62,823 bases of DNA, filler included, from Dugesia japonica (GCA_001938525.1; 5 parts of 5 records of this genome joined end to end with filler, not necessarily neighbours in it); one strand, 5' to 3'; numbered from the whole stretch's first letter, positions 22,985-48,811 are shown. Translations and numbers: made by a program. Notes: a model not told the origin generated them from the sequence alone.

Positions 22985-23091
22985 AACCGGCAACTCATCT
23001 AGACTTTAAATTTCTACGTCAATTTTGATTTCAGTCACATTAATAATTTCTTCATCATTATTCATTAATAATCTTATCAAGGAAAAGATTT

Positions 23092-23330
23092 TTACCTGAT
23101 CACATGTTTTTTTGTGTTGGTCGAAATAATCATACTTGTTAGAGTCTTGATGTTGCTCGAATTAAATAAATATGGTCGTACATTTGTCGCTAAATTTCTT
23201 TTTTCTTCTACTCGGGAAATTAATGTTATTTTGAACCGTATATCCAATATAAACTTTAAAGTAATATCTGCACTAAACAAATTTGCACTTCGAAACACAG
23301 ATTTGATGACTAAATGAATCGACAGAAACG
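23092..23330 (-). pseudogene. Possible DNA transposase fragment (hAT-like)
   Basis: RSANLFSADITLKFIL...RVEEKRN resembles a hAT C-terminal segment. It is short and degenerate. Confidence 0.35.
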
Positions 23331-23574
23331 CTATGATTATTTCTGTAAGTAAATAAAATTCATCCTTGTAAAAATAAATATCTATTTTTAGGTCTATTAA
23401 TTAAAATTAAAACCTCACAACTCTCCAAATGTTTTTGTTTAATCACAAAGTTTTTGATTAAATTAAAAAAGATGAAGAATAATCCATAGTATTCAAACAA
23501 ATAATCTGAGAAATTTAATTTTCATTTTTAAATTTTTAAAATGAAATATTTTAAAAATTTTGATCTTATTTTAA

Positions 23575-23601
23575 ATATATATATATATATATATATATAT
23601 A
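23575..23601. repeat. (TA)n microsatellite
   Basis: Seen directly. Confidence 0.95.
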
Positions 23602-23662
23602 CTTTACATAGTTAAGTTATTTTTAAAAATAATTTCTTAAAATAATTTAATACTTTTACTTA

Positions 23663-25026
23663 TGTTGGGATCTTATCTAGGTGAGTTAACAAGTCTAGGG
23701 TATGGAGCCGTTGACTCGGAATCCCAGTACAGACTCGCATACCTTTGGTTTGGGTTCATATCTCGTAATACTTGCTAAATTTTTAGAACTACTCAAGCTA
23801 TATTGGTTAATAGTGTCAGTTTAACAAAATAATTTTAATAAAATAAAACCATACTAAATAAAAGAAAATCCGGTTATGGATAGTTACATTATTGTTAATT
23901 CCACACCTTAAATTAAAATCACATCAATAAAACTAACAACTAANGTGAGCAGCAATCTCGATCTGGAGCAAGCACATAGGAATTATTTTGACTTATCGTG
24001 ATCACCAATTGTATACCACTTAATCATTAATTTCGGATCCACATCTGCATAACGACGTCAATTATTTTGGGTTCCATAATTTCTGCAACTCATTAAGTCG
24101 GAAATCGTCGCGACTGTAATCAAATACTAAAAAATAATCACCTTCTGTGATAATTGAAAATTTTTCCGTCTAACTGCAGGATTTTCTTAATAAAAGATTG
24201 ATTTTTTGGTGAAAATTACATCAGTATTTATACCCGGTTTAAGATACACCATCGTTCTTTTTATTGGTCATTTGGAATTGTACGATTTTTCTGACGTTTC
24301 CATTGGCTTGAACGTTACATGAGTTCTTTTTATTGGTAGTTATTTTAGGATTACAAAATTATTGGTCAATCTTCAACCCCTTATAACTTCTTTCTGGATC
24401 TTGTTACAATTTTTAACTGGCATTTTTTAATTCCCCGATTTTTTCTAGTCCATAATTTTCTTATTTGCCAATTTTAACTCCAANNNNNNNNNNNNNNNNN
24501 NNNNNNNNNNNNNNNNNNNNNNNNNNNNNNNNNNNNNNNNNNNNNNNNNNNNNNNNNNNNNNNNNNNNNTAAATAAGTAATTTTATTTTATTTTCTTCAA
24601 AATTTTAATTACATGTTCATTTCTTTTTTTCTGATCTAAATTAATTTACGTTCGTCGTTTTTCTATCATTAATTAATTCCTTTAATTTATTTCCTCCTTC
24701 TCCAATTATTAGTTCAATATNGTTTTCTTAGTTTTGCTTAATGAACTAATTGTTATCCATTATTTTCTTTATCTGACTGATAGCTTCTATTACTTCTTTT
24801 CTTCATTTTGGCTATCTTATTTCGCAGTTGTTTCTTTAGATATTTCTGGTTATTACGTTGGTTTAGACTACCAACCTTGGTTTTTCTTTTAATTATTTCT
24901 TTCCTTCAATGAATTGTGACCTTCCTCTGTTTAGATTCTTTGTTTCTTTATTTGGTGACTATCTTTTCACTTTCAGCTTTAACTATCGCCATTTTTATTC
25001 TTCGTACCAGGTGTTTCACCCCAACA
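23663..25026 (-). mobile_element. Insertion A of the TGTTGGG...CCCCAACA family, 4-bp TSD CTTA
   Basis: CTTA|TGTTGGGATC...GGTGTTTCACCCCAACA|CTTA. Confidence 0.85.
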
Positions 25027-25872
25027 CTTATAATAATATATAGCAATTAATTTTTTGATCGAATCTTCTATGACTGTTTCATTGAAGTGATATTGAGGGA
25101 TATTTGCATTATTACATTTATCATGATATTTCTCATTATTATATTTATCAAATTAAATCTTTAATATAAAATATAGAGAAACCAAACCTTATATTTTATT
25201 ATACTACAAAGATATTTTTTTTAATTTACTGAAATTACCGCGAATTCCAAAAAAATTACTAGTCTATCGGTAATAGAATTTGAATATAATTTATCGAAAA
25301 CCGGTAATGCAACGTAACTCTAACAATTTTCAATTTTACATTTCCAAATTATTGGTAATTTATCATCAGTTTTCTATTTTCTATTTATTCGTTTATCTTT
25401 AGTTTTGGTATATTAGATTTATAAGCATTTGTTATATATTTTTATCTATAGTTTATGTTTCGTCCTTTCCCATAAAATTAAGGCAAAATTAATCAATTTG
25501 GTTTCCTCTTTTTGTTTTAGCCTTCGAAATATTTCTACCAATTTTGATATTTTTAGTTTTGATATCTTTAATTTTTTATTTTAATAACTTATTCTCATGG
25601 ATTTAAGAGAAATTCTAATTATTTAGTCGGGATTTTTAAGTGTTTATATTTGGTTTTTAATTATCTTATTTATTACTCATTGAGTTATTTTTGAATATTT
25701 AAAGCAAAAAATTAAATAATTAAATAAAATTTGATTTAATTTTATGGAAATATAATGTGTACATATATTTTAATTTAGTAATTTGAGCTAAAATTATTTG
25801 TTTTTACTCGATTTTGAAAGTGAGTTGTTTAAATCTTTGATTATTATTTATAGATTATTTAGTAATTTTAAA

Positions 25873-27254
25873 ATGTTTGGATTTATTCAGAAAATATTAG
25901 ATTGGATTAAAAGTTTATTTTGGAAGGAAGAAATGGAATTAACATTAGTAGGATTACAATTTTCTGGAAAAACAACATTTGTTCACGTGATATCTGTAAG
26001 TAAATTTTATAAAAAATAAGTATTTGATTTTATTAGTCTGGTCAATTTACCGAAGATATGATACCAACAGTAGGATTCAATATGAAAAAAATAACTAAAG
26101 GGAATGTTTCAATAAAAGTATGAAAATTATTATTATTTAAATTTATCCGGAGATTTTAGATGTGGGATATTGGTGGACAACCAAGGTTTAGAAGTATGTG
26201 GGAGAGGTATTGTCGAGGTGTTAATGCTATAATGTAATATTATGATTTTTTGCTTATCATATTTTGTTGATAGATATATGGTAGATTCTGCTGATCATGA
26301 TAAAATTGAAGCTGCAAGAAATGAATTACATAATTTATTGGATAAACCTCAGTTACAAGCCATTCCTGTACTCGTTTTAGGAAATAAACGGGATCTTCCT
26401 AATGCATTAGCAGAACATGAGTTAATAGAAAAACTTAACCTCAATCAAATAACAGATCGAGAAATATGTTGTTATTCAATATCTTGTAAAGAACAGGAAA
26501 ATATTGGTTAGTTGTTAGAAAGTCTTTAAAATAGATTAACCATGAGATATTTTTATTGGTTTTTGATTATTCTAAGAAATTAACTTTGCATCCTATTAAA
26601 TTCAATATTTAGTAAATTTGAGAAACCCAATTACTTTTTTATTTCTATTTTAATAAACTAAATATGATTAATTCTATTATATATAAGTTAATTATTATTG
26701 TAAATTAATTAAAATCCCTGAAATACTGGGGGAATTTAAAAATGTAGAAACAATAAAAAGTTTTCTACTGTTTTTTTTGTAAAATCATTGGGTTAAGTTA
26801 AACAATTAATTTGAAATTAAATCACAATAAATTAGGTCTACGTTTTATATAAATTTCAAAGTATAATTTTCAATAATTATGCAATTGATCAGTAAAAAAT
26901 TTCATGTTTTTTGTGTTGCTGTTTTTAGTTATAAGAAATTTGAAATAAATCAATTAACATTCAAACCTTCAATTTATTTAAGTAATTCAATTTACGTATT
27001 ATTTATATTATAGTATTTTCACAATTTTAGAAAAAAATTCCTTCAAAATACTGTTATAAATCTTATTTTATAAACAACAATTATTTCAAGTTGTTCATGT
27101 TTGGTTTTTTAATCCAAGTGCTTTTTCAAATTATTGTGGGTTATTTAAACGTCTAATTTGCGTTTTGAAAATTTAATAAATTCTGAATGTATTTAAAATT
27201 ATTTTAGATATAACTCTACAATGGTTGATGAAAAACTCCAAGTCTGGGCGATAA
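25873..27254 (+). CDS. ARL8: ADP-ribosylation factor-like protein 8 (185 aa); exons 25873-25995, 26037-26117, 26160-26233, 26274-26506, 27208-27254
   Basis: [55 protein letters not shown] and CYSISCK..NIDITLQWL. All introns are GT-AG and the exons sum to 558 nt in frame. Confidence 0.97.
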
Positions 27255-28466
27255 TTTTTTTTGTTTAATTGAATTTGTGATTTATTTATGGATTTCAATG
27301 ACATTTGAAAATTGATTTATGTAGATTTTAATGTTTGTATTTTATTATAAAAACCTAATGTTTATTAATTTTGCATGTATTTATAATTATTAAAGTAATN
27401 NNNNNNNNNNNNNNNNNNNNNNNNNNNNNNNNNNNNNNNNNNNNNNNNNNNNNNNNNNNNNNNNNNNNNNNNNTTGGGATTCTCAATTGTTTTTAGTAAT
27501 AGGTATTAATTTAATTCATTTTGTAGAGAAAATAATCGTCTTTCTATTACTTTTTTAATAATTCAAAATCGTAGTAGTGATACAAAGAAATTGTCACTAA
27601 GTTTACTGATAAAATTACTTAAATAATTATATCTAAAAATGATAATTGTTAATATGTTTCAATAACCACCAGGAATTAAGTTTTCTTGACTTTGTTTGAC
27701 TCAGATCTGTCCTCACTGATCCTACTAGTAGGGGTGCCAATGCCCTTCAATTTGATGGATTTTTAATTCTTTAATCATTATCTCGTAATGTTGTTTTTGA
27801 TGAAAGTCAATTGATCTCTTAAGTGACGTTTTATTATAATGGTTGGGGTTCCATCTAGGTAGCTCAATCTAATTCCATGTCATAGGGTCAGATGACCTCG
27901 TAAAACCCCATGAAGAATTAAATCTAGCGTCCTTATTCTAGATCTTCGCATTGGAGCCGGTGACTCGTAACCCGTTCGAGTGTATGCTCGTATTCCTTTG
28001 GTTCGGGTCAATATTTCAATAATCGCTTTGATTCGTTAAAATTTTCTAGACCGAGCTTACAAGCTATACAATCAATTTTATTTGTCGACGACGATGGAAT
28101 CTTTGTCGTATTCTATCATCTCGTGATCGTTCGTAGGTTTCTTCTGAAATTTGCCGTCGGGATCCCTCCTTTATGCTTTGATATCTTTAAGGATTCTCTT
28201 TCGAATTACTCGTTCGATTATTCTGTGTCTCATGGAAAAACTTGTCTGGTTGATCAACAATCTTTATACATATTTGGGGCACCTTATTAACTTATCTATC
28301 GTTCTCTCTCATAATCATTGTTGGCATAATTGTTATGATTACTCGGATCAAATTCATCATTACGATAGTTGTAAACTTTAAACAAAATGGGAATTCTTAC
28401 AATTCTTCAATTAGTACAATGCAAAATTNTTAATTATATGCAACTGTTCCAACTATCAGATCAAGG

Positions 28467-29467
28467 ATGTATTCGCAAACTATAAACTTTTTTATAGTAA
28501 TAAGTTGTTTACATGTAGTTAATGCGCAATATGAATTTCAATTTAAGATACTACTTATGGAGAAACTAATGCTACGAAGAGGGTATCCTATGTTTTCAGC
28601 GAGGATAACGGCTGCACTGGTATTTCAATATTTAATTTCCTTTTATTATGAATGATATTGTATAGATTATGAAATAGGACATCAGCATCGTGAAGTTAAC
28701 ATCATAAACTTAAAAGGCAATCATAATTACTATGTAGTATTTAAGTATCAACAATACAAGCTGGACGATTGGGTAACTTTGTCTAATATCAAATGGTATT
28801 TAACAACATTGCAGATCAAAAAAGAAAAATATCCTATCTACAATCATGTACAATATTTTCCAAAACATACCCGGATGGAAAGGTAACATAAATAAGATTC
28901 TTTTATCAAGTAATTCGAATTTCTCAAGGATATGATACAGATAGTTCGTGCGAAAGCCAGATTACATCAATAAATGTTATGTATTATCGACGGGAAAGTG
29001 GAAAATATGCTTTATATTTGGTATATTCAGAAGAAATAAAATTAGACCCAAAACGAACTACTGTTAATCAAAAAGTTACAGAAAACATGACAAAAACAAC
29101 GATTACAAGCAGAATTATTGCTAGCTCAACAATTAGTACAGCTATGAGTAGCCCATTGAGTAAAAAACCTATTTTGAAAAGATTGAATGCAGAATTTTGG
29201 AGTGAAATTAAATAATGTCAGGCGGAAAATATCACTGGAAAGGCAGTTTCAAAAGTGATTTTAACAAAATGTAATTGTTCTACAATAATCCCTTGCCTAA
29301 TAAAAAGGGGTGATAAAATGTAAAAGCAAATGCAAATGATAATTGTCATATTATTAACGGTGTTTGGATTTATGGGCGTAATTGCTATATAGTTATGGGC
29401 ACAATACAGGCTGAAAACGTTACGACTTCGTTTCATACCAGAAAATCCACACGAGTTGGATGAATGA
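28467..29467 (+). pseudogene. Decayed type-I membrane protein (signal peptide, S/T-rich stalk, TM helix)
   Basis: Signal-like MYSQTINFFIVISCLHVVNA, stalk TKTTITSRIIASSTISTAMSS, and TM MIIVILLTVFGFMGVIAI followed by basic RLKTLRLR. Interrupted by stops and frameshifts. Confidence 0.5.
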
Positions 29468-30304
29468 TTAAAAAGCCTTGTGACAATTACCAACTAAATA
29501 TAATTGAAAATTCAAATTTAAAAAGTTTTTCAACAGATATATCTTTAATAATTTTGGCATCTGAAGGGTATTTGTCAAAAGTCTCAGGAGGAATATTATC
29601 AATGGATGACATTTCTCTTTCAGTTTACTATGCTTTTCTTCCTCATTAGCTTTTATTGACTTTGATCTAGTAATCATCTCACAAATATGTTGGATCTCAT
29701 TACTTATTAGAATACCATGTTTGCTTTTCATTAGAATTATTCTAGTATTCACCGGTACTTCTTCAATTCGAGGTTCAACATTTGCAAAAGGCGCTTTATC
29801 AATTTTCTCATTATCCAAATAAACACTCACAGTTTCGCTAGTTAGATCCGAATTTCAAAGGTATCGAAAAAGAATCANAGTTGTTGATGTAACATTGAAT
29901 ATGTATTTATCCAGAACTTTGGTTGTGGGCAAAATAGCCATATTGACTTATGATTTAGTGCAATACTTTGCCACATGTCCCTGAAATCCACACGTTTAGC
30001 ATTTTATTGGTTCCTTAAAATTTGATCTTTGTAGATTTGAATTGATTGTATTATTTGAATATCTTTTAAAGTCGTTGGATGCATCAATTCTATCCAATAT
30101 TCTGATATTCTATTTCTTCGATTTTGCTTCTTAAAATAGGAACAATATTTTTCGAATACATATTAATAATTGTTCTTCCAATATAACTTCTTTAATTGCT
30201 TCTATTTCTAGAGTTAATTCTGACGGTAATCTGTGTAGCCATTCTACTTGATTTTCTGACTCGAGCTTTTGTGATGATCAAAATTTCTTTTTCAGTATCG
30301 TACT
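29468..30304 (-). pseudogene. gag C-terminus with CCHC knuckle and protease-like region
   Basis: C*TCGFQGHVAKYC at 29960-30001, then a beta-rich protease-like stretch ending HGILISNE..ITRS. No clear D(T/S)G and no RT. Confidence 0.6.
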
Positions 30305-30788
30305 NNNNNNNNNNNNNNNNNNNNNNNNNNNNNNNNNNNNNNNNNNNNNNNNNNCAAGAGTAACAAATAAGAAAAAATTGGGATAGTGAAGATTTTAAAA
30401 CCTGCAATTAGAAAACTCCTGAATAGATGAATCATCCTTTAGATAAACACCAATGAATTTATTAATAAAGTGGATTTTCCTCACTCTTGAATACTAGGAA
30501 ATCAAGATTTTACTATTTTGTCTAGATTCAAGTTTGGTCAAAAGTCGTTAAATATTCAAATTGAAGTATTTAGTTCAACAAATCATCTCTTAAATGGAAT
30601 TGCGGCAATCTGATCTTAAATCCGAAAAAGATTTGAAACAAATTCGTGTCATATATTTTAAGATACGGAGTCAATAGCAGGATGACATTAAACCAAACTC
30701 ACGATCAAGTATCTCAACATCAANNNNNNNNNNNNNNNNNNNNNNNNNNNNNNNNNNNNNCCAGAAGATAGTTAATCAGGAATCCGTT

Positions 30789-30968
30789 AGTAGTTATAAT
30801 AATACGAATATAATTCAACAAATGCTTTCCTTCTATTCATATTGAAAATTCTCACTTCGTTCGCTGGATTTTCAATATGAAAATTAAAAAAAACTATCTG
30901 CATAATTATATTCGTTTTACAATTTAATATGATCATAATTTAATTATATTCGTATTATTATAACTACT
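30789..30968. mobile_element. 180-bp fold-back MITE with 27-bp perfect TIRs and an internal 14-bp-stem hairpin
   Basis: AGTAGTTATAATAATACGAATATAATT (30789-30815) is inverted at 30942-30968. The internal stem is TTCATATTGAAAAT/ATTTTCAATATGAA. Confidence 0.8.
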
Positions 30969-31831
30969 CGTATTTGTATAAATAATTTTTAAAATAATTG
31001 ATTTTTTAAAAAAATGAAAAAAGGATATTTTTTAATTCAAATAAATGAAATATTATTGATTTTAAAAAAAGCTTATTTTGTTAATTAATGTAAATACATA
31101 ATTAGTAACCGATTTTAAATATAATTATTTAATAGCATTGAAATTGTGAAATTTAATAATCATTTAAATATGATATTTTAAGTAATGCATCTTTGAAAAA
31201 AAGAAATGAAAGCCATTTGATATATATAATTTTTTAATAGTATTATAAATTTTAAAAATAACAAAACTCAAATGTATGAGATGCTGATTAATTTATATTT
31301 TTTTAAGAACCGGTTCTTCACCATCTCAATAATTGTTAATCATCTAATTTACATGCAAGTAATTTTGTAACAGTAAACACGTAAATCAAAGTCATAAACT
31401 CCTGTAATGATCTAACTTAGCAAACTATGCAATTTCTGTAGCATACATAAGCGAGTTATACCAGGAGCTAGTTTGGAGAAAGTAAATTTTCTACTTCAAT
31501 ATACTTTCCTAATAATTATAAACTTTTTTCTATAAATAATACATTTTCATTTTAAAATATTAAAAAATTTATTTGCTTGAATTTTTTTAAAGTAATTTTC
31601 AAGAATTTTTTAATATGAATATATATTAACATTTTAATTAATTGATATAATTAAATTTTAATTAAAAAATTAATTACAATAATTAAAATTAAATAAATTA
31701 ATTAATTAAAATTTTAATTAAAAATAAAAATATTTTATACGTTACAATTGATTCTAAAATAATAATAAATAAAAAAATCTACTACTTATTATTGTAAGTA
31801 GAATTATTTTATGAATTTTAAATAATATATT

Positions 31832-42997: not shown

Positions 42998-45900
42998 TGT
43001 TGGGGTCCCACCTGAGTTGAGTGACACGAAAAGGGTGGCTGGGGAAAAACAGCCTTCTGGGGAACCCTTTCAAGAGTTTATCCTACCGTCCCTGTGGTAG
43101 GTTTTCAGTTTATGGCGGTTGACCTTGCTCTTAATGGAAGGTACACACCGAAAACCTTTATTTCGGGTTCACTATTTTTCCCTTATTGTTATCACCAAAA
43201 AGAAGAAATTGCAACTCTGATTAAAAANNNNNNNNNNNNNNNNNNNNNNNNNNNNNNNNNNNNNNNNNNNNNNNNNNNNNNNNNNNNNNNNNNNNNNNNN
43301 NNNNNNNNNTTAAACTCAGCGATATCGTCATCGTCATCCCACTGCGCTACGTTTGGGTTCACAATTTGCCTTGATAAGTCCGCAATGTACTGCTTTAAAA
43401 ATTCAATTTTTCGCTGCAGTAATTGCTTATTCTCTGCTTCCAATGCCTTTGTCTGAATGGCAAGGTCATTTAGTTTCTTTACTATAGCGTCCAATCTTTT
43501 AATTAACTTGTCTCGTTGATCTAAATGTCGCAATAGGGCCTGGTTGGTTTTCCGTTTCAGATGCCTCTCCACCAGCAGGCGGCGCATTATGCGGTGGCAT
43601 CGATGAAGATTGTTTGGGAAATGGATACGAGGCACTAAAACAAATTATCATTAATTTTAGTAAAATTTTCTCAATGAAAAAGAATATCCACCTAATGAAA
43701 ATAATAAAAAGAAAATTAATGAGACAGTTCAAACTAGCAAATTTATTAACAAAAGAGTTGGCATCCAAATTAATTCTTAGGGGTCTGGGTGCTTTTCTCA
43801 ACCATTAGAGGTTCAAGTGGCATGGACGCCTTCAGCTTCAGAACGTCACCTACCAGTTTATTTTCTCGATCTTGGTAGGACCGGATCATATCAACCAAAG
43901 ACTCTACTTGCCCCTTCCATACCCTCTCTTGTGCATGGGAGGCCTCGACTTCCTTTCGGAAAGCCACACATTTTTTCTGGTAGTGGCTTACTTTACTATT
44001 GGCATTGGCTGTATCCGCCTCCCATTTACGCTTGACGAGTCGATACAGGTCCTAGGTCATCTCGCGGTCCTCACTGTCGTCGCGCATCTTTTTCGTAGGA
44101 GCCGAAATGCGATTAAAAGACGAGTGCACTAAAGGTTACATATTAATGCGAGCAAGATTTATAAATTTATGCATCCAGAGCAAAATATATATATNNNNNN
44201 NNNNNNNNNNNNNNNNNNNNNNNNNNNNNNNNNNNNNNNNNNNNNNNNNNNNNNNNNNNNNNNNNNNNNNNNNNNNNNNNNNNNNNNNNNNNNNNNNNNN
44301 NNNNNNNNNNNNNNNNNNNNNNNNNNNNNNNNNNNNNNNNNNNNNNNNNNNNNNNNNNNNNNNNNNNNNNNNNNNNNNNNNNNNNNNNNNNNNNNNNNNN
44401 NNNNNNNNNNNNNNNNNNNNNNNNNNNNNNNNNNNNNNNNNNNNNAGAATCTAGTACCTCGAGGAAGGTGGGCGATCGACACAGGCAATAGGGACGGCCC
44501 ATCTTGCCAATGATCAATGGTCTGGTTAGTTATTGGATCAAAAATGGTAGTTCGGTGTAGAACGTTTTGGATGCGATCGGGACCAACCCATTGATCGAAA
44601 GCTTGGCACTCTGCTGCGGCCCATTCTATTTCGTTATCCGCATCTTCCTTGGTCAAGTTGGAATAATCCGTCAGGATACCNNNNNNNNNNNNNNNNNNNN
44701 NNNNNNNNNNNNNNNNNNNNNNNNNNNNNNNNNNNNNNNNNNNNNNNNNNNNNNNNNNNNNNNNNNNNNNNNNNNNNNNNNNNNNNNNNNNNNNNNNNNN
44801 ATTTAAGTAAGTAAATAGTTTATATTTTATGAGAATAAATTAAAATACAACACGGATTTTAAATCATAACGAATTTCAACACACATTTATTCCAAGTATT
44901 CTTCAAAGAAAACAATTCACTGAGATTTTTAAATGCAGCTGCTATTCCTCATCGATATCCACCTTCTAGAGGAAACATCTCAACGAAACACTGAAGGTCA
45001 GTTTCGTCTGGATGCTCTACCCGGCCTTTGGTTAGGTAGTGGATTATCAATTGCTTCTTTCGAGCGTATCGACGCTGCTTCCTTATCTTTCGTAAAGTGT
45101 CACGCAATACTGCTGGCATTATCTAAGGAATCAAAGCAATAAGATAATAAAATCGTTAAAACAATCTTGCTATTAGTTCATATTCACTTAACCGATATCT
45201 TGATATTTTTACACTATAATTGTGAGGTGGAAACACCGTATTATCTTCGGATTTTAAGTCGTGAAGAAAATTCTTGTTTTGGAGTTCATCTTGGTTTAGT
45301 AAATTCTCGAAAATGTCATGATTAATTGAACGATTACCCAGGTACTTACCCATAACTCTTACAACTTTCATGAGGTTAAGGACATGATAGTGTTAAACAA
45401 AAATCTAATAAGGTTTGGATTACTACGCTAGTAGATAGAAAATAAATTACAAAAAAGAAAAATATTGAATCTCTCCCACCCAATTTATTAAGTTTAGTCC
45501 TGGTCAATTTGTTATTTATCCTTAATGATGACCGGGATTTTAGAGTTACTACTCATGATAATAATTATGACCAGCCATGTTAGGCACACAATAAAATCTA
45601 ATCGTTAAGAAGTATGCCTTTAGATAGATTAACTCATTTCATTTTGAATAAAATCCTGGTTTTTCTAACCATAACAAAATAAACCAAATCATTGTTTAAC
45701 AGGTTAATAATCGATATGGATTTTGCACTAAGGTCACTGTGAATTATGTCAGCAAACCAGTCAATAGTATTATCATGCCAAACACATCAATCATCTCATC
45801 ATGAGTACAGACACTCATCACAAGGACAATGAGGGAGAGACAGTTACAAACCATAAGTCTATCACCGGCAATCACCACCATCCCGATGACGGAATCAATT

Positions 45901-48811
45901 CCCACTACGGTGGCAAAATGTTGTTCAACCGATCAGCATAATTAAATTTTTAATATGATCAAGATTAATTCTTTTTTTTTAAAATTATGAACATAAACAG
46001 AAGACATTCAATCGGTCTTGAATAATTTGTTTTTAGTTGGTTGCTTAGCAACTTCTCTTATCTCATAGTGCACACCTACTATAAACGGGTAGTCATGTAN
46101 NNNNNNNNNNNNNNNNNNNNNNNNNNNNNNNNNNNNNNNNNNNNNNNNNTCATCATGAGTACAGACACTCATCACAAGGACAATGAGGGAGAGACAGTTA
46201 CAAACCATAAGTCTATCACCGGCAATCACCACCATCNNNNNNNNNNNNNNNNNNNNNNNNNNNNNNNNNNNNNNNNNNNNNNNNNNNNNNNNNNNNNNNN
46301 NNNNNNNNNNNNNNNNNNNNNNNNNNNNNNNNNNNNNNNNNNNNNNNNNNNNNNNNNNNNNNNNNNNNNNNNNNNNNNNNNNNNNNNNNNNNNNNNNNNN
46401 NNNNNNNNNNNNNNNNNNNNNNNNNNNNNNNNNNNNNNNNNNNNNNNNNNNNNNNNNNNNNNNNNNNNNNNNNNNNNNNNNNNNNNNNNNNNNNNNNNNN
46501 NNNNNNNNNNNNNNNNNNNNNNNNNNNNNNNNNNNNNNNNNNNNNNNNNNNNNNNNNNNNNNNAATTATTATTCTCATTTTCGATATTCATCATACATCT
46601 AGTGAATGATTTCTGGATTTTCGGCATAATGTAAAATAGTAAATCGTAGAAGGAGATAAAGGATTATGCGGTTCAGAGAAAACTAATAGAAAGACGGTTA
46701 TCGCATGCGAGACAGAAATGACTGAATGATTAACTGCTGATCTCTTACTACAAAATCATAGATACATTACGGCTGTTAGCATGAGGCCATGGATTATTCA
46801 GAATCTCTATCCTTCAGTGAATTCTAGCTGATCGTTTGGTCATTTGTTACAACAAATTGACATTGCTTTTACATTATTCAAACTAGTGGCTGCAATAGTT
46901 GAATGAAATTCGTGTTAGCATATCATTGATCGTAGAACATTTCGGTGATTTTTGGTAATATAAGTGTACGTGTATCCTTGAGACGGTATGGTGTGGAAAT
47001 GAACAATATTAATTTTTTAACTATCTTATGTACTGCGAATCATTAAAGTGGATCTAAAACGGAACAGTGAGTTTTATTCTATTTTAATTAGAAAAATTTA
47101 TGTAACAAATATATCGAATAAAATTTTGTTTATATTATTTTTTAATTTCGTAACATGAATTAGAAATTTTATTATTAATTAACATAAAATTACACAACAA
47201 GGAGAAAATCAATATACATAAAATTTACTTTTTAATTAAAACCAATTTCTTTTCTTCTGCANNNNNNNNNNNNNNNNNNNNNNNNNNNNNNNNNNNNNNN
47301 NNNNNNNNNNNTCTCTTACTACAAAATCATAGATACATTACGGCTGTTAGCATGAGGCCATGGATTATTCAGAATCTCTATCCTTCAGTGAATTCTAGCT
47401 GATCGTTTGGTCATTTGTTACAACAAATTGACATTGCTTTTACATTATTCAAACTAGTGGCTGCAATAGTTGAATGAAATTCGTGTTAGCATATCATTGA
47501 TCGTAGAACATTTCGGTGATTTTTGGTAATATAAGTGTACGTGTATCCTTGAGACGGTATGGTGTGGAAATGAACAATATTAATTTTTTAACTATCTTAT
47601 GTACTGCGAATCATTAAAGTGGATCTAAAACGGAACAGTGAGTTTTATTCTATTTTAATNAGAAAAATTTATGTAACAAATATATCGAATAAAATTTTGT
47701 TTATATTATTTTTTAATTTCGTAACATGAATTAGAAATTTTATTATTAATTAACATAAAATTACACAACAAGGAGAAAATCAATATACATAAAATTTACT
47801 TTTTAATTAAAACCAATTTCTTTTCTTCTGCATGGGGTCTACGGATGAATTAAAATCGAATAACATCAGGATAGTCTTCGTCTGCAATTTATTATACACG
47901 GAAACAATTGGTTTGTCCGACTAGTAATGAATTTTCTTCCTTTACTGACCACGATGGAGTCAAAACNNNNNNNNNNNNNNNNNNNNNNNNNNNNNNNNNN
48001 NNNNNNNTTCGACTAACTGTTTGTGATACCCACGATAATTACAACAATGTTGCTCCACAAAAATTTGTATTAATGTACTTAAAACACTGATGATATAGAT
48101 TGAGAATTCTAGAAATTTTGGTTTTTGTGAAAAGTTGTTGTTTTTGTTGTTAAAGTTAGGGGTCCTTTTATATGGTTTTCTTAACACCCCAACTTGAACC
48201 GGATTTGATGATTATTTTTAAATCAGCTTTTTCTTGATCTTACTGGTTACTGAACCAATTTTCCAAAATTTTCTAAACATTTTAGTTCTGCTATTGGCAG
48301 CTATTTTTATCGGCCCACCTGACATTTGATTTTTTGTTTTATTTTTAATTTCAGGTTTACTATTGGTCGGATCTAGAGAACCCTGCAGCAACCCTTTGGA
48401 AGGTGTNNNNNNNNNNNNNNNNNNNNNNNNNNNNNNNNNNNNNNNNNNNNNNNNNNNNNNNNNNNNNNNNNNNNNNNNNNNNNNNNNNNNNNNNNNNNNN
48501 NNNNNNNNNNNNNNNNNNNNNNNNNNNNNNNNNNNNNNNNNNNNNNNNNNNNNNNNNNNNNNNNNNNNNNNNNNNNNNNNNNNNNNNNNNNNNNNNNNNN
48601 NNNNNNNNNNNNNNNNNNNNNNNNNNNNNNNNNNNNNNNNNNNNNNNNNNNNNNNNNNNNNNNNNNNNNNNNNNNNGCATTTACCTTTGGCTTTATTTCT
48701 TTTCCTGCTAAGGTTGTTTTCAAACTGTATAATTTATTACCGGTGGTTATTGAAGTCCTGTTGATTTATTTTTCTGGCTTGTTCCCGTTTAGCGGGTGTT
48801 TCACCCCAACA
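42998..48811 (-). mobile_element. Insertion B of the TGTTGGGG...CCCCAACA family, 4-bp TSD TATT, nested in Polinton locus 2
   Basis: TATT|TGTTGGGGTCCC...GGTGTTTCACCCCAACA|TATT. The last 17 nt are identical to those of insertion A. GC-richer coiled-coil ORFs lie at 43192-44656. Confidence 0.85.

What the first reader, a model, noticed from the sequence alone, without database searches (positions are those of the whole stretch)
23663..25026. LTR-less insertion family with TGTTGGG...CCCCAACA ends and 4-bp target duplications
Seen: insertion A (TSD CTTA) and insertion B (42998-48811, TSD TATT) both end in the identical 17-mer GGTGTTTCACCCCAACA and start with related TGTTGGG(G/A)TC..A.CT sequences. 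A third related left end is at 27840. Only 7-9 bp are inverted, no long direct repeats are visible, and sizes and interiors differ greatly (1.4 kb, at least 2.9 kb, about 5.8 kb including gaps). Known: TG..CA ends with 4-bp TSDs are the signature of Gypsy-type integrases, also used by Ginger DNA transposons, which have much longer TIRs. Inference: a cargo-carrying family mobilised in trans by a Gypsy-like integrase, fitting neither a normal LTR element nor Ginger.
Basis: partly seen in the sequence, partly recalled or inferred. Interest (0 to 1): 0.75.

Follow-up and report, generated by a model that had tools for sequence, protein, structure and literature searches.

The report
Solo LTR of gypsy-like retrotransposon
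The 1.4-kb insertion is most likely one leftover long terminal repeat (a "solo LTR") of an ordinary gypsy-type retrotransposon, not a new LTR-less mobile element, and a decayed gag-protease gene of such an element lies nearby.

Summary
Unit A (23663-25026) starts TGTTGGG, ends CCCAACA and is flanked by CTTA on both sides. A second unit, C, starting at 27840, shares A's left ~190 bp. A 7-bp inverted end of the form TGTTRNR...YNYAACA with a 4-6 bp duplication is the published signature of a single LTR. Read on the minus strand, A is laid out like an LTR: an A-rich U3, four CCAAT boxes, TATAAATA, then one poly(A) hexamer. The block shared with C begins just after that hexamer, where U5 would be. 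A has no coding capacity and no internal direct repeats. The minus strand at 29468-30304, 1.6 kb from C's end, holds a decayed gag / zinc-knuckle / protease remnant. It is oriented as expected upstream of a 3' LTR. Its only relative found, a JGI contig 73% identical in DNA, also carries a Ty3/retrovirus-type integrase. Best reading: A is a solo LTR of a Ty3/gypsy-like family, and C is the 3' end of a decayed related element. Paired LTRs could not be tested, because no other copy of this genome was reachable. Ginger and TRIM/LARD membership both fail. Ordinary; low interest.

The parts
23659..23662 (.). Left copy of the 4-bp target-site duplication, CTTA
   Evidence: Chance of a 4/4 match about 0.013.
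23663..25026 (-). Unit A: a putative solo LTR, read on the minus strand as U3-R-U5. It includes an 86-N assembly gap at 24484-24569.
   Evidence: Ends TGTTGGG...CCCAACA. No ORF above 52 aa. No internal direct repeats. No Rfam or tRNA match.
24201..25026 (-). U3-like part of A: A-rich on the minus strand, starting TGTTGGGGTGAAACACC. The boundary with R is inferred.
   Evidence: Minus-strand A content 46-54% on both sides of the gap. Sequence read.
24263..24365 (-). Cluster of four CCAAT boxes; two lie in a repeated ACCAATAAAAAGAAC motif
   Evidence: four in about 100 nt, reached by 1 of 1000 shuffles. Also (family D6).
24227..24232 (-). TATA box (GGGTATAAATACTG), about 30 nt downstream of the last CCAAT box
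   Evidence: It is the only TATAAA on either strand inside A.
23834..23839 (-). ATTAAA, the only poly(A)-type hexamer downstream of the TATA box on the minus strand, 171-176 nt from the end of A
23663..23815 (-). U5-like end of A, shared with C and ending ...GATCCCAACA. The inner boundary is inferred.
25027..25030 (.). Right copy of the target-site duplication, CTTA
27840..28270 (-). Unit C: an LTR-like U5-R end of a related element. Minus-strand landmarks are TATAAAG at 28263-28268 and AATAAA at 28077-28082, and it ends ...GGAACCCCAACCA. The inner boundary is not defined.
   Evidence: Similarity to A's end. Motif positions. The 40 nt after AATAAA are 60% G+T.
29468..30304 (-). Decayed gag (C-terminal part) / CX2CGX2GHX4C zinc knuckle / aspartic protease remnant of a Ty3/gypsy-like element. 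It is cut off upstream by the N run 30305-30354. Against its relative P0001 it has 3 in-frame stops, 3 frameshifts and several short indels. The protease catalytic motif seen in P0001 is not recognisable.
   Evidence: frame. (P0001, E 8.6e-28). (tblastn E 1.3e-68). (73% DNA identity over 735 nt to L187). (counts).
28467..29465 (+). Decayed plus-strand ORF between C's LTR-like end and the gag-protease remnant. It has a signal-peptide-like start, N-glycosylation sequons, an S/T-rich stretch and a hydrophobic segment near the end. It carries about four in-frame stops and one change of frame. Whether it belongs to the element is unknown.
   Evidence: No Pfam match. No word-search relative.

Best explanation
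A is a solo LTR. A Ty3/gypsy-type retrotransposon was inserted by its integrase, which made the 4-bp CTTA duplication and recognised the TGTTGGG/CCCAACA ends. Later, recombination between its two LTRs removed the interior and one LTR, leaving one 1.36-kb LTR still flanked by the duplication.

The LTR's sense strand is the window's minus strand:
- U3: 25026 down to about 24200. It is A-rich and holds four CCAAT boxes and a TATA box.
- R: about 24200 down to about 23815.
- U5: about 23815 down to 23663. It begins just after the single poly(A) hexamer.

C is the same kind of LTR end from a related but different family. It probably lies at the 3' end of an old, rearranged element whose gag-protease remnant survives 1.6 kb upstream on the same strand.

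Shown: the ends, the duplication, the motif order, the lack of coding capacity, the shared U5-like block, and the gypsy-like gag-protease next to C.
Inferred: the recombination history, the U3/R/U5 boundaries, and that C's end and the gag-protease remnant belong to one element.
For: (1) The ends match the published LTR short inverted repeats. These are TGTTRNR...YNYAACA, conserved about 7 bp in perfect complementarity (PMC3601003). Most LTR retrotransposons have TG..CA ends and 4-6 bp duplications (PMC12440569). A has TGTTGGG...CCCAACA and CTTA/CTTA.
(2) On the minus strand only: four CCAAT boxes in 100 nt (reached by 1 of 1000 shuffles), then the only TATAAA in A, then the only downstream poly(A) hexamer. 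C has TATAAAG and AATAAA on the same strand. Its hexamer sits at the equivalent distance from the end once C's ~70-nt insert is allowed for.
(3) The A/C similarity is confined to the stretch between the poly(A) hexamer and the end, which is where U5 would be.
(4) A has no ORF above 52 aa, no direct repeats and no long TIR.
(5) A gag / zinc-knuckle / protease remnant lies on the minus strand at 29468-30304. It is 73% identical in DNA to L187. L187 carries gag-asp_proteas, Integrase_H2C2 and rve domains, and its integrase matches Ty3 Gag-Pol (7q5b) and PFV integrase.
Against: - No paired copy of A or C flanking gag-pol, and no PBS or PPT, was seen. The piece is only 8.8 kb and no other copy from this genome could be reached.
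- 1.36 kb is long for an animal gypsy LTR.
- A's poly(A) hexamer is the ATTAAA variant, and the 40 nt after it are only 50% G+T. The A-rich U3 holds several chance AATAAA.
- Between C's end and the gag-protease remnant lies a decayed ORF on the opposite strand instead of pol. There is no RT or integrase anywhere in the piece. The link between C's end and the gag remnant is therefore adjacency and orientation only.
- The inner (U3) end of C's LTR could not be found.
Confidence: 0.65

Rival explanations
1. A is not a solo LTR. It is the two outer LTR parts of a full-length or internally deleted element, whose interior and repeated LTR parts were collapsed into the assembly gap at 24484-24569.
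For: The gap length is only an estimate. Short-read assemblers break in repeats. The piece has four multi-base N runs, three of them in or next to the element-like sequence.
Against: The contigs run 821 and 457 bases into A from unique flanks, so they do not break at the repeat boundary. Both gap edges are very AT-rich, low-complexity DNA of the same A-rich composition, which is a common cause of short technical gaps. No part of A is duplicated on the two sides.
Confidence: 0.1
2. One reading: these are LTR-less, non-autonomous units of variable content, recognised at short TG...CA ends and inserted in trans by a gypsy-like integrase. That would be a kind of element distinct from LTR retrotransposons and from Ginger.
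For: No direct repeats were seen in A or C. A and C have unrelated interiors. C's interior holds an unrelated plus-strand ORF rather than pol.
Against: Every 'odd' feature of A is what a lone LTR shows (PMC3601003). A has a one-strand promoter / poly(A) layout. A and C share a ~190-bp stretch at one end of the unit. At the other end C's counterpart could not be located, so nothing shows the conservation at both tips that an integrase substrate family would need. No known route produces linear DNA with these ends without reverse transcription through two LTRs.
Confidence: 0.08
3. A is a non-autonomous cut-and-paste DNA transposon of the Ginger (or another 4-bp-duplication) superfamily.
For: TGT...ACA ends and a 4-bp duplication in AT-rich DNA, as described for Ginger2 (PMC2836005).
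Against: Ginger TIRs are 40-297 bp, whereas A has 7 bp. Ginger1 duplications are CCGG or CCGT. No integrase-like transposase occurs in the piece. The nearby coding remnant is gag-protease, which marks a retroelement.
Confidence: 0.05
4. Chance: the ends, the duplication and the A/C similarity are coincidences in AT-rich DNA.
For: Short AT-rich matches abound in the piece. TGTTGGGR with one mismatch is not enriched overall.
Against: The joint occurrence of the 7-bp inverted ends, the 4/4 duplication (p about 0.013), a GC-richer body against the flanks and a 76-nt block at E 1.7e-6 next to matching termini is not plausibly chance.
Confidence: 0.02

Closest known systems
Solo LTRs of Ty3/gypsy (Metaviridae) retrotransposons
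   Same: TGTTRNR...YNYAACA ends inverted over about 7 bp. A 4-bp target duplication. No coding capacity. CCAAT/TATA followed by a poly(A) hexamer on one strand. A conserved U5-like end. A gypsy-like gag-protease remnant beside the related copy.
   Different: Long for an animal gypsy LTR (1.36 kb, including an estimated 86-N gap). Its full-length partner with paired LTRs, PBS and PPT has not been seen. The family has only one detectable protein relative in the public collections searched.
Ginger1 and Ginger2/Tdd DNA transposons (PMC2836005)
   Same: TGT... termini like gypsy LTRs. A 4-bp duplication. Ginger2 prefers AT-rich targets.
   Different: Ginger has 40-297-bp terminal inverted repeats and an integrase-like transposase, and Ginger1 duplicates CCGG or CCGT. 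A has a 7-bp inverted end, a CTTA duplication and no transposase, and its neighbour gene remnant is gag-protease.
TRIM / LARD non-autonomous LTR elements
   Same: Non-coding or cargo-bearing units moved in trans by the proteins of an autonomous LTR retrotransposon. C, with gag-protease but no RT or integrase, and L187, with RT/RNase H missing, resemble such deletion derivatives.
   Different: TRIM and LARD keep two direct LTRs with a PBS and PPT. No direct repeats occur within A or C.
Troyka (PMC12440569)
   Same: A gypsy-related LTR retroelement lineage defined partly by its terminal signature.
   Different: Troyka has CG..CG ends and 3-bp duplications. A has TG..CA ends and a 4-bp duplication.

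Membership tests
LTR of a Ty3/gypsy-type retrotransposon (solo LTR) | Short inverted repeats TGTTRNR...YNYAACA, conserved about 7 bp (PMC3601003) | tested here: met
   TGTTGGG at 23663-23669 and CCCAACA at 25020-25026, 7/7 complementary
LTR of a Ty3/gypsy-type retrotransposon (solo LTR) | Target-site duplication of 4-6 bp directly flanking the TG...CA ends | tested here: met
   CTTA on both sides, chance about 0.013. The 4-6 bp rule is from PMC12440569.
LTR of a Ty3/gypsy-type retrotransposon (solo LTR) | U3-R-U5 layout: promoter (TATA) upstream of a poly(A) signal on the same strand | tested here: met
   Minus strand: four CCAAT boxes (1 of 1000 shuffles), TATAAA at 24227, ATTAAA at 23834. 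C has TATAAA at 28263 and AATAAA at 28077. These are motif matches only; no transcript data.
LTR of a Ty3/gypsy-type retrotransposon (solo LTR) | [quoted passage not shown] | tested here: inconclusive
   G+T is 0.50 in A and 0.60 in C over the next 40 nt
LTR of a Ty3/gypsy-type retrotransposon (solo LTR) | The same sequence occurs elsewhere as two direct copies flanking gag-pol, with a PBS next to U5 and a PPT next to U3 | not testable with these tools
Pattern scans gave only chance k-mer hits. Exact-protein look-ups were empty. The only relative, L187, is a 2.4-kb contig without LTRs.
LTR of a Ty3/gypsy-type retrotransposon (solo LTR) | Association with gypsy-type genes (gag with CCHC knuckle, retropepsin, H2C2 + DDE integrase) | tested here: inconclusive
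   A gag / knuckle / protease remnant lies 1.6 kb from C's end in the matching orientation. An integrase is seen only in the relative L187. Nothing of the kind is next to A itself.
Ginger1 / Ginger2 DNA transposons | Terminal inverted repeats of about 40-297 bp | tested here: not met
   Only 7 bp (8 of 9) are inverted. Definition from PMC2836005.
Ginger1 / Ginger2 DNA transposons | Duplication CCGG or CCGT (Ginger1), or 4 bp within an AT-rich RTATAY target (Ginger2) | tested here: inconclusive
   CTTA fails the Ginger1 rule. The length fits Ginger2, but the target TTACTTATAA is not RTATAY. One site only.
Ginger1 / Ginger2 DNA transposons | Integrase-like transposase in autonomous members sharing the ends | not testable with these tools
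   None in the piece. The genome is not available.
TRIM / LARD non-autonomous LTR elements | Two direct terminal repeats enclosing a PBS...PPT interior | tested here: not met
   No direct repeat between the ends of A or within C. Caveat: N runs at 24484-24569, 30305-30354 and 30724-30760.
Troyka | CG..CG termini and 3-bp duplications | tested here: not met
   TG..CA ends and a 4-bp duplication

The most novel reading that the evidence does not exclude
The TGTTGGG...CCCAACA units are not LTRs of paired-LTR elements. They are free-standing DNA segments of variable content, some carrying unrelated genes such as the plus-strand membrane-protein-like ORF in C. A gypsy-type integrase inserts them in trans using only about 7-bp ends plus a conserved ~150-nt subterminal block. 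That would be an integrase-only, LTR-less mobile family lying between LTR retrotransposons and Ginger.
Probability: 0.06. Interest if true: 0.75.

Novelty: new member of a known kind. Interest (0 to 1): 0.15.

Why it matters
If the main reading is right, this is routine repeat annotation. It adds a solo LTR and a decayed relative from a poorly represented Ty3/gypsy-like lineage in a very AT-rich, probably metazoan genome. Its use is practical. It gives a terminal signature and a U5 block for masking the family. It also warns that short inverted ends without visible long repeats should first be read as lone LTRs. The unlikely alternative, integrase-only mobilisation of LTR-less cargo units, would bear on how LTR retrotransposons and integrase-type DNA transposons are related.

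Tried and rejected
- Rfam at E up to 1 and ARAGORN over the piece found nothing, so there is no ribozyme, tRNA-like or SINE-type module.
- Pfam on all longer ORFs and stop-free pieces of C matched only the neighbouring Arf-family gene.
- The word-index protein search found nothing for the 128-aa protease piece or the 107-aa plus-strand ORF piece. With P0001 it found only P0001 itself.
- Exact-protein look-ups of three window ORFs were not on record.
- Pattern scans of metagenome and prokaryote-genome contigs with the 17-mer and the U5 core gave 66 and more than 120 hits. All were chance k-mers: blastn of A and C against all 186 loci found no extended match.
- A literature search for the terminal octamer returned only irrelevant papers.
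- Folding of the shared block was weak: z -2.1 and -1.3 on the minus strand, and three compensated pairs from only two sequences. I make no structure claim.
- I looked for C's inner LTR end (CCCCAACA-like on the plus strand) and for a polypurine tract. None was convincing.
- A TATTTGGGGCACC at 28271 and a TTGGGATTCTCA at 27474 resemble the family's ends but are too short to count.
- I first read the plus-strand ORF in C as a spliced gene. The candidate introns do not keep the frame, so I describe it as a decayed ORF.
- P0002 from the big search is a repeat artefact.

Full report
**What the piece is.** Positions 22985-31831 are very AT-rich eukaryotic DNA, with GC of 17-38% in 500-nt windows. 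It has four multi-base N runs and four single Ns. Between the two units of interest lies an ARL8-like small GTPase gene on the plus strand, at about 25870-27253, with short introns. Its fourth exon matches Pfam Arf at 1.4e-17 and is about 80% identical to human ARL8B in the PDB. That suggests a metazoan host, which is an inference. The joined-exon protein was not built, so the organism could not be looked up that way.

**Checking the observation.**
- Unit A is as described. It begins TGTTGGGATC at 23663 and ends GGTGTTTCACCCCAACA at 25026, with CTTA immediately outside both ends.
- At the local base composition a 4/4 flank match has a chance of about 0.013.
- The ends are inverted over 7 bases (8 of 9) and no further. 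Neither the repeat finder nor a sensitive self-blastn shows a direct repeat inside A or a longer inverted repeat.
- The 17-mer is unique in the piece.
- The "third left end" is real. From 27840, C reads TGGTTGGGGTTCCATCTAGG. It shares with A the terminal ~25 nt and a 76-nt block (72% identical, E 1.7e-6), with about 70 extra nucleotides in between. Beyond about 190 bp the two are unrelated.
- Insertion B lies outside my piece and was not examined.

**The gap in A, tested first.**
- A has no ORF longer than 52 aa on either strand, so there is no frame to preserve across 24484-24569.
- The 250 nt on each side share an unusual composition: 46% and 54% A on the minus strand. In the flanking host DNA, A is roughly equal to T.
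- The matched ends and the duplication tie both sides to one insertion.
- Both gap edges are low-complexity AT-rich DNA, a common cause of short technical gaps.
- The true length cannot be known from here, and I did not try to fill it.

**What A looks like inside.** The published analysis of LTR structure (PMC3601003) reports these motifs as conserved in animal Metaviridae and retroviral LTRs:
- short inverted repeats TGTTRNR...YNYAACA, conserved about seven bases in perfect complementarity;
- a TATA-like AT-rich core promoter;
- an AATAAA signal;
- a GT-rich stretch after that signal.

A's ends, TGTTGGG...CCCAACA, fit the repeat consensus exactly.

On the minus strand only, A has the following layout:
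- four CCAAT boxes within 100 nt (24263-24365), a density reached by 1 of 1000 shuffles;
- about 30 nt further on, the only TATAAA in A on either strand (GGGTATAAATACTG, 24227-24232);
- about 390 nt further on, the only poly(A)-type hexamer downstream of that TATA box (ATTAAA, 23834-23839), 171 nt from the end.

C shows the same order on the same strand: TATAAAG at 28263-28268 and a canonical AATAAA at 28077-28082. That hexamer is 237 nt from C's end, which is the equivalent position once C's ~70-nt insert is allowed for. The sequence shared by A and C is the stretch between the poly(A) hexamer and the end, which is where U5 lies in an LTR read on the minus strand. The GT-rich criterion is only weakly met, at 50% G+T in A and 60% in C. 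Rfam and tRNA scans found nothing. Folding of the shared block gives no strong signal.

**What lies next to C.** On the minus strand from 30304 down to 29468, one reading frame carries a canonical retroviral-type zinc knuckle (CX2CGX2GHX4C) and is far more open than chance allows in DNA this AT-rich. Pfam and the word-index search did not recognise it.
- The full HMMER search with its longest stop-free piece found one true relative, P0001, at E 8.6e-28 and 58% identity.
- P0001 lies on a 2.4-kb JGI contig, L187 (sample 3300016484).
- L187 encodes a gag C-terminal part, a knuckle-like motif and an aspartic protease (gag-asp_proteas, 2.5e-10). After an internal loss of RT/RNase H it continues with an Integrase_H2C2 domain (4e-22) and an rve core (1.5e-9). 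The integrase's best solved relatives are PFV integrase and Ty3 Gag-Pol 7q5b.
- L187 positions 385-1098 match window 30284-29612 at 73% DNA identity over 735 nt. tblastn gives E 1.3e-68.
- No RT or integrase remnant exists anywhere in the piece.
- A frameshift-aware alignment to P0001, printing counts and outer bounds only, gives 3 in-frame stops, 3 frameshifts, several short indels, and 148 of 235 aligned codons identical. At least one of these differences may belong to L187 rather than to the window copy. The protease catalytic motif present in P0001 is not recognisable in the window copy.
- The remnant is cut off upstream by the N run 30305-30354. The sequence beyond that run is not homologous to L187's gag N-terminal part.

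The remnant's orientation is the one expected if C's end at 27840 is the U5 end of a 3' LTR. Between them, however, lies not pol but a decayed plus-strand ORF (28467-29465). It has a signal-peptide-like start, N-glycosylation sequons, an S/T-rich stretch and a hydrophobic segment near its end. It has no Pfam or word-search relative. I could not find the inner (U3) end of C's LTR or a polypurine tract. C is therefore best described as an old, rearranged patch: an LTR-like end, an unrelated decayed ORF and a gag-protease remnant, whose unity rests on adjacency and orientation alone.

**Explanation.** The most economical reading is that A is a solo LTR of a Ty3/gypsy-like retrotransposon. Integrase made the 4-bp duplication. 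LTR-LTR recombination later removed the interior. What remains is one LTR with its short inverted ends, promoter and poly(A) layout and no genes. C is the corresponding end of a related family, and U5 is the only part the two families still share. I put this at about 0.65. The main reservation is that the defining test could not be run: the same sequence occurring as paired direct repeats around gag-pol, with a PBS and a PPT.

The rivals are:
- a full element whose interior is hidden in A's gap (0.10);
- a Ginger-type DNA transposon (0.05);
- chance (0.02).

**Comparison with known families.**
- Ginger1 and Ginger2 have TGT... termini and 4-bp duplications, but they are defined by 40-297-bp TIRs and an integrase-like transposase. 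Ginger1 also duplicates CCGG or CCGT (PMC2836005). A fails the TIR test.
- GingerRoot has 6-bp duplications and 100-150-bp TIRs (PMC6839031).
- Troyka has CG..CG ends and 3-bp duplications (PMC12440569).
- TRIM and LARD elements need two direct LTRs, which are not present here.
- All the testable defining features of a lone gypsy-type LTR are met, or met weakly.

**Attempts to reach other copies.**
- Scans of the metagenome and prokaryote-genome collections with the 17-mer and the U5 core returned only chance k-mers. No locus aligned to A or C beyond the seed.
- Exact-protein look-ups of window ORFs were empty.
- P0001 has no other relative in the word search.

- I did not scan the viral-contig collection for relatives of the gag-protease. 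It is listed under referred steps.
- L187 came in through a look-up of a protein returned by the big search, before I knew what it was. It is a fragment of a virus-like retroelement of unknown host.
- I did not fill any N run.
While choosing stop-free pieces for tool calls, I also noted there where some stops of the gag-protease remnant lie. None of this was put into a tool call as remembered letters. None is in the notes, the script outputs or this report. The ARL8 comparison rests alone.

**Verdict.** The gypsy-integrase link is right. The claim of a new LTR-less, cargo-carrying kind is not supported. This is an ordinary solo LTR plus a decayed relative: a new member of a known kind, of low interest.

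Noticed in passing
window 25870-27253 (+): An ARL8-like small GTPase gene with five exons. The first three introns are 41-50 nt and the last is about 690 nt. Exon 4 matches Pfam Arf (1.4e-17) and is about 80% identical to human ARL8B. A lies about 850 bp upstream of it, with its putative promoter pointing away from the gene.
   Followed up: partly
window 28467-29465 (+): A decayed ORF for a secreted or membrane-type protein, with a signal-peptide-like start, N-glycosylation sequons, an S/T-rich stretch and a hydrophobic segment near the end. It converges on the gag-protease remnant, with the two terminal stops 2 nt apart. It has no relatives in Pfam or the word search. It could be a host pseudogene or an antisense passenger of the element.
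   Followed up: partly
window 30789-30968: A hairpin-like inverted repeat with 30-nt arms that are 97% complementary and 120 nt apart, at the right edge of the GC-richer patch. It may be a small foldback or MITE-like unit.
   Followed up: no
L187 1-2399 (JGI 3300016484, Ga0186813_110581): The only relative found is itself an internal-deletion derivative: gag-protease joined to integrase with no RT/RNase H, and with in-frame stops. The contig looks like a transcript.
   Followed up: partly
window 29468-30304 (-) and L187: One in-frame stop in the gag part is shared by the window copy and L187, although they are only 73% identical in DNA. It may be ancestral (for example a read-through site) rather than decay.
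   Followed up: no
window 27474-27485: The first letters after the N run 27400-27473 read TTGGGATTCTCA, resembling the family's terminal TGTTGGGATCTTA. The GC-richer stretch 27660-27839 just left of C is also unexplained. This may be another fragment of the family broken by the gap.
   Followed up: no
window 24263-24340 (-): The motif ACCAATAAAAAGAAC occurs twice, 69 nt apart, within A's CCAAT cluster. It looks like a duplicated enhancer-like module.
   Followed up: no
window 23575-23601: An (AT)13 microsatellite about 60 bp to the left of A's insertion site.
   Followed up: no
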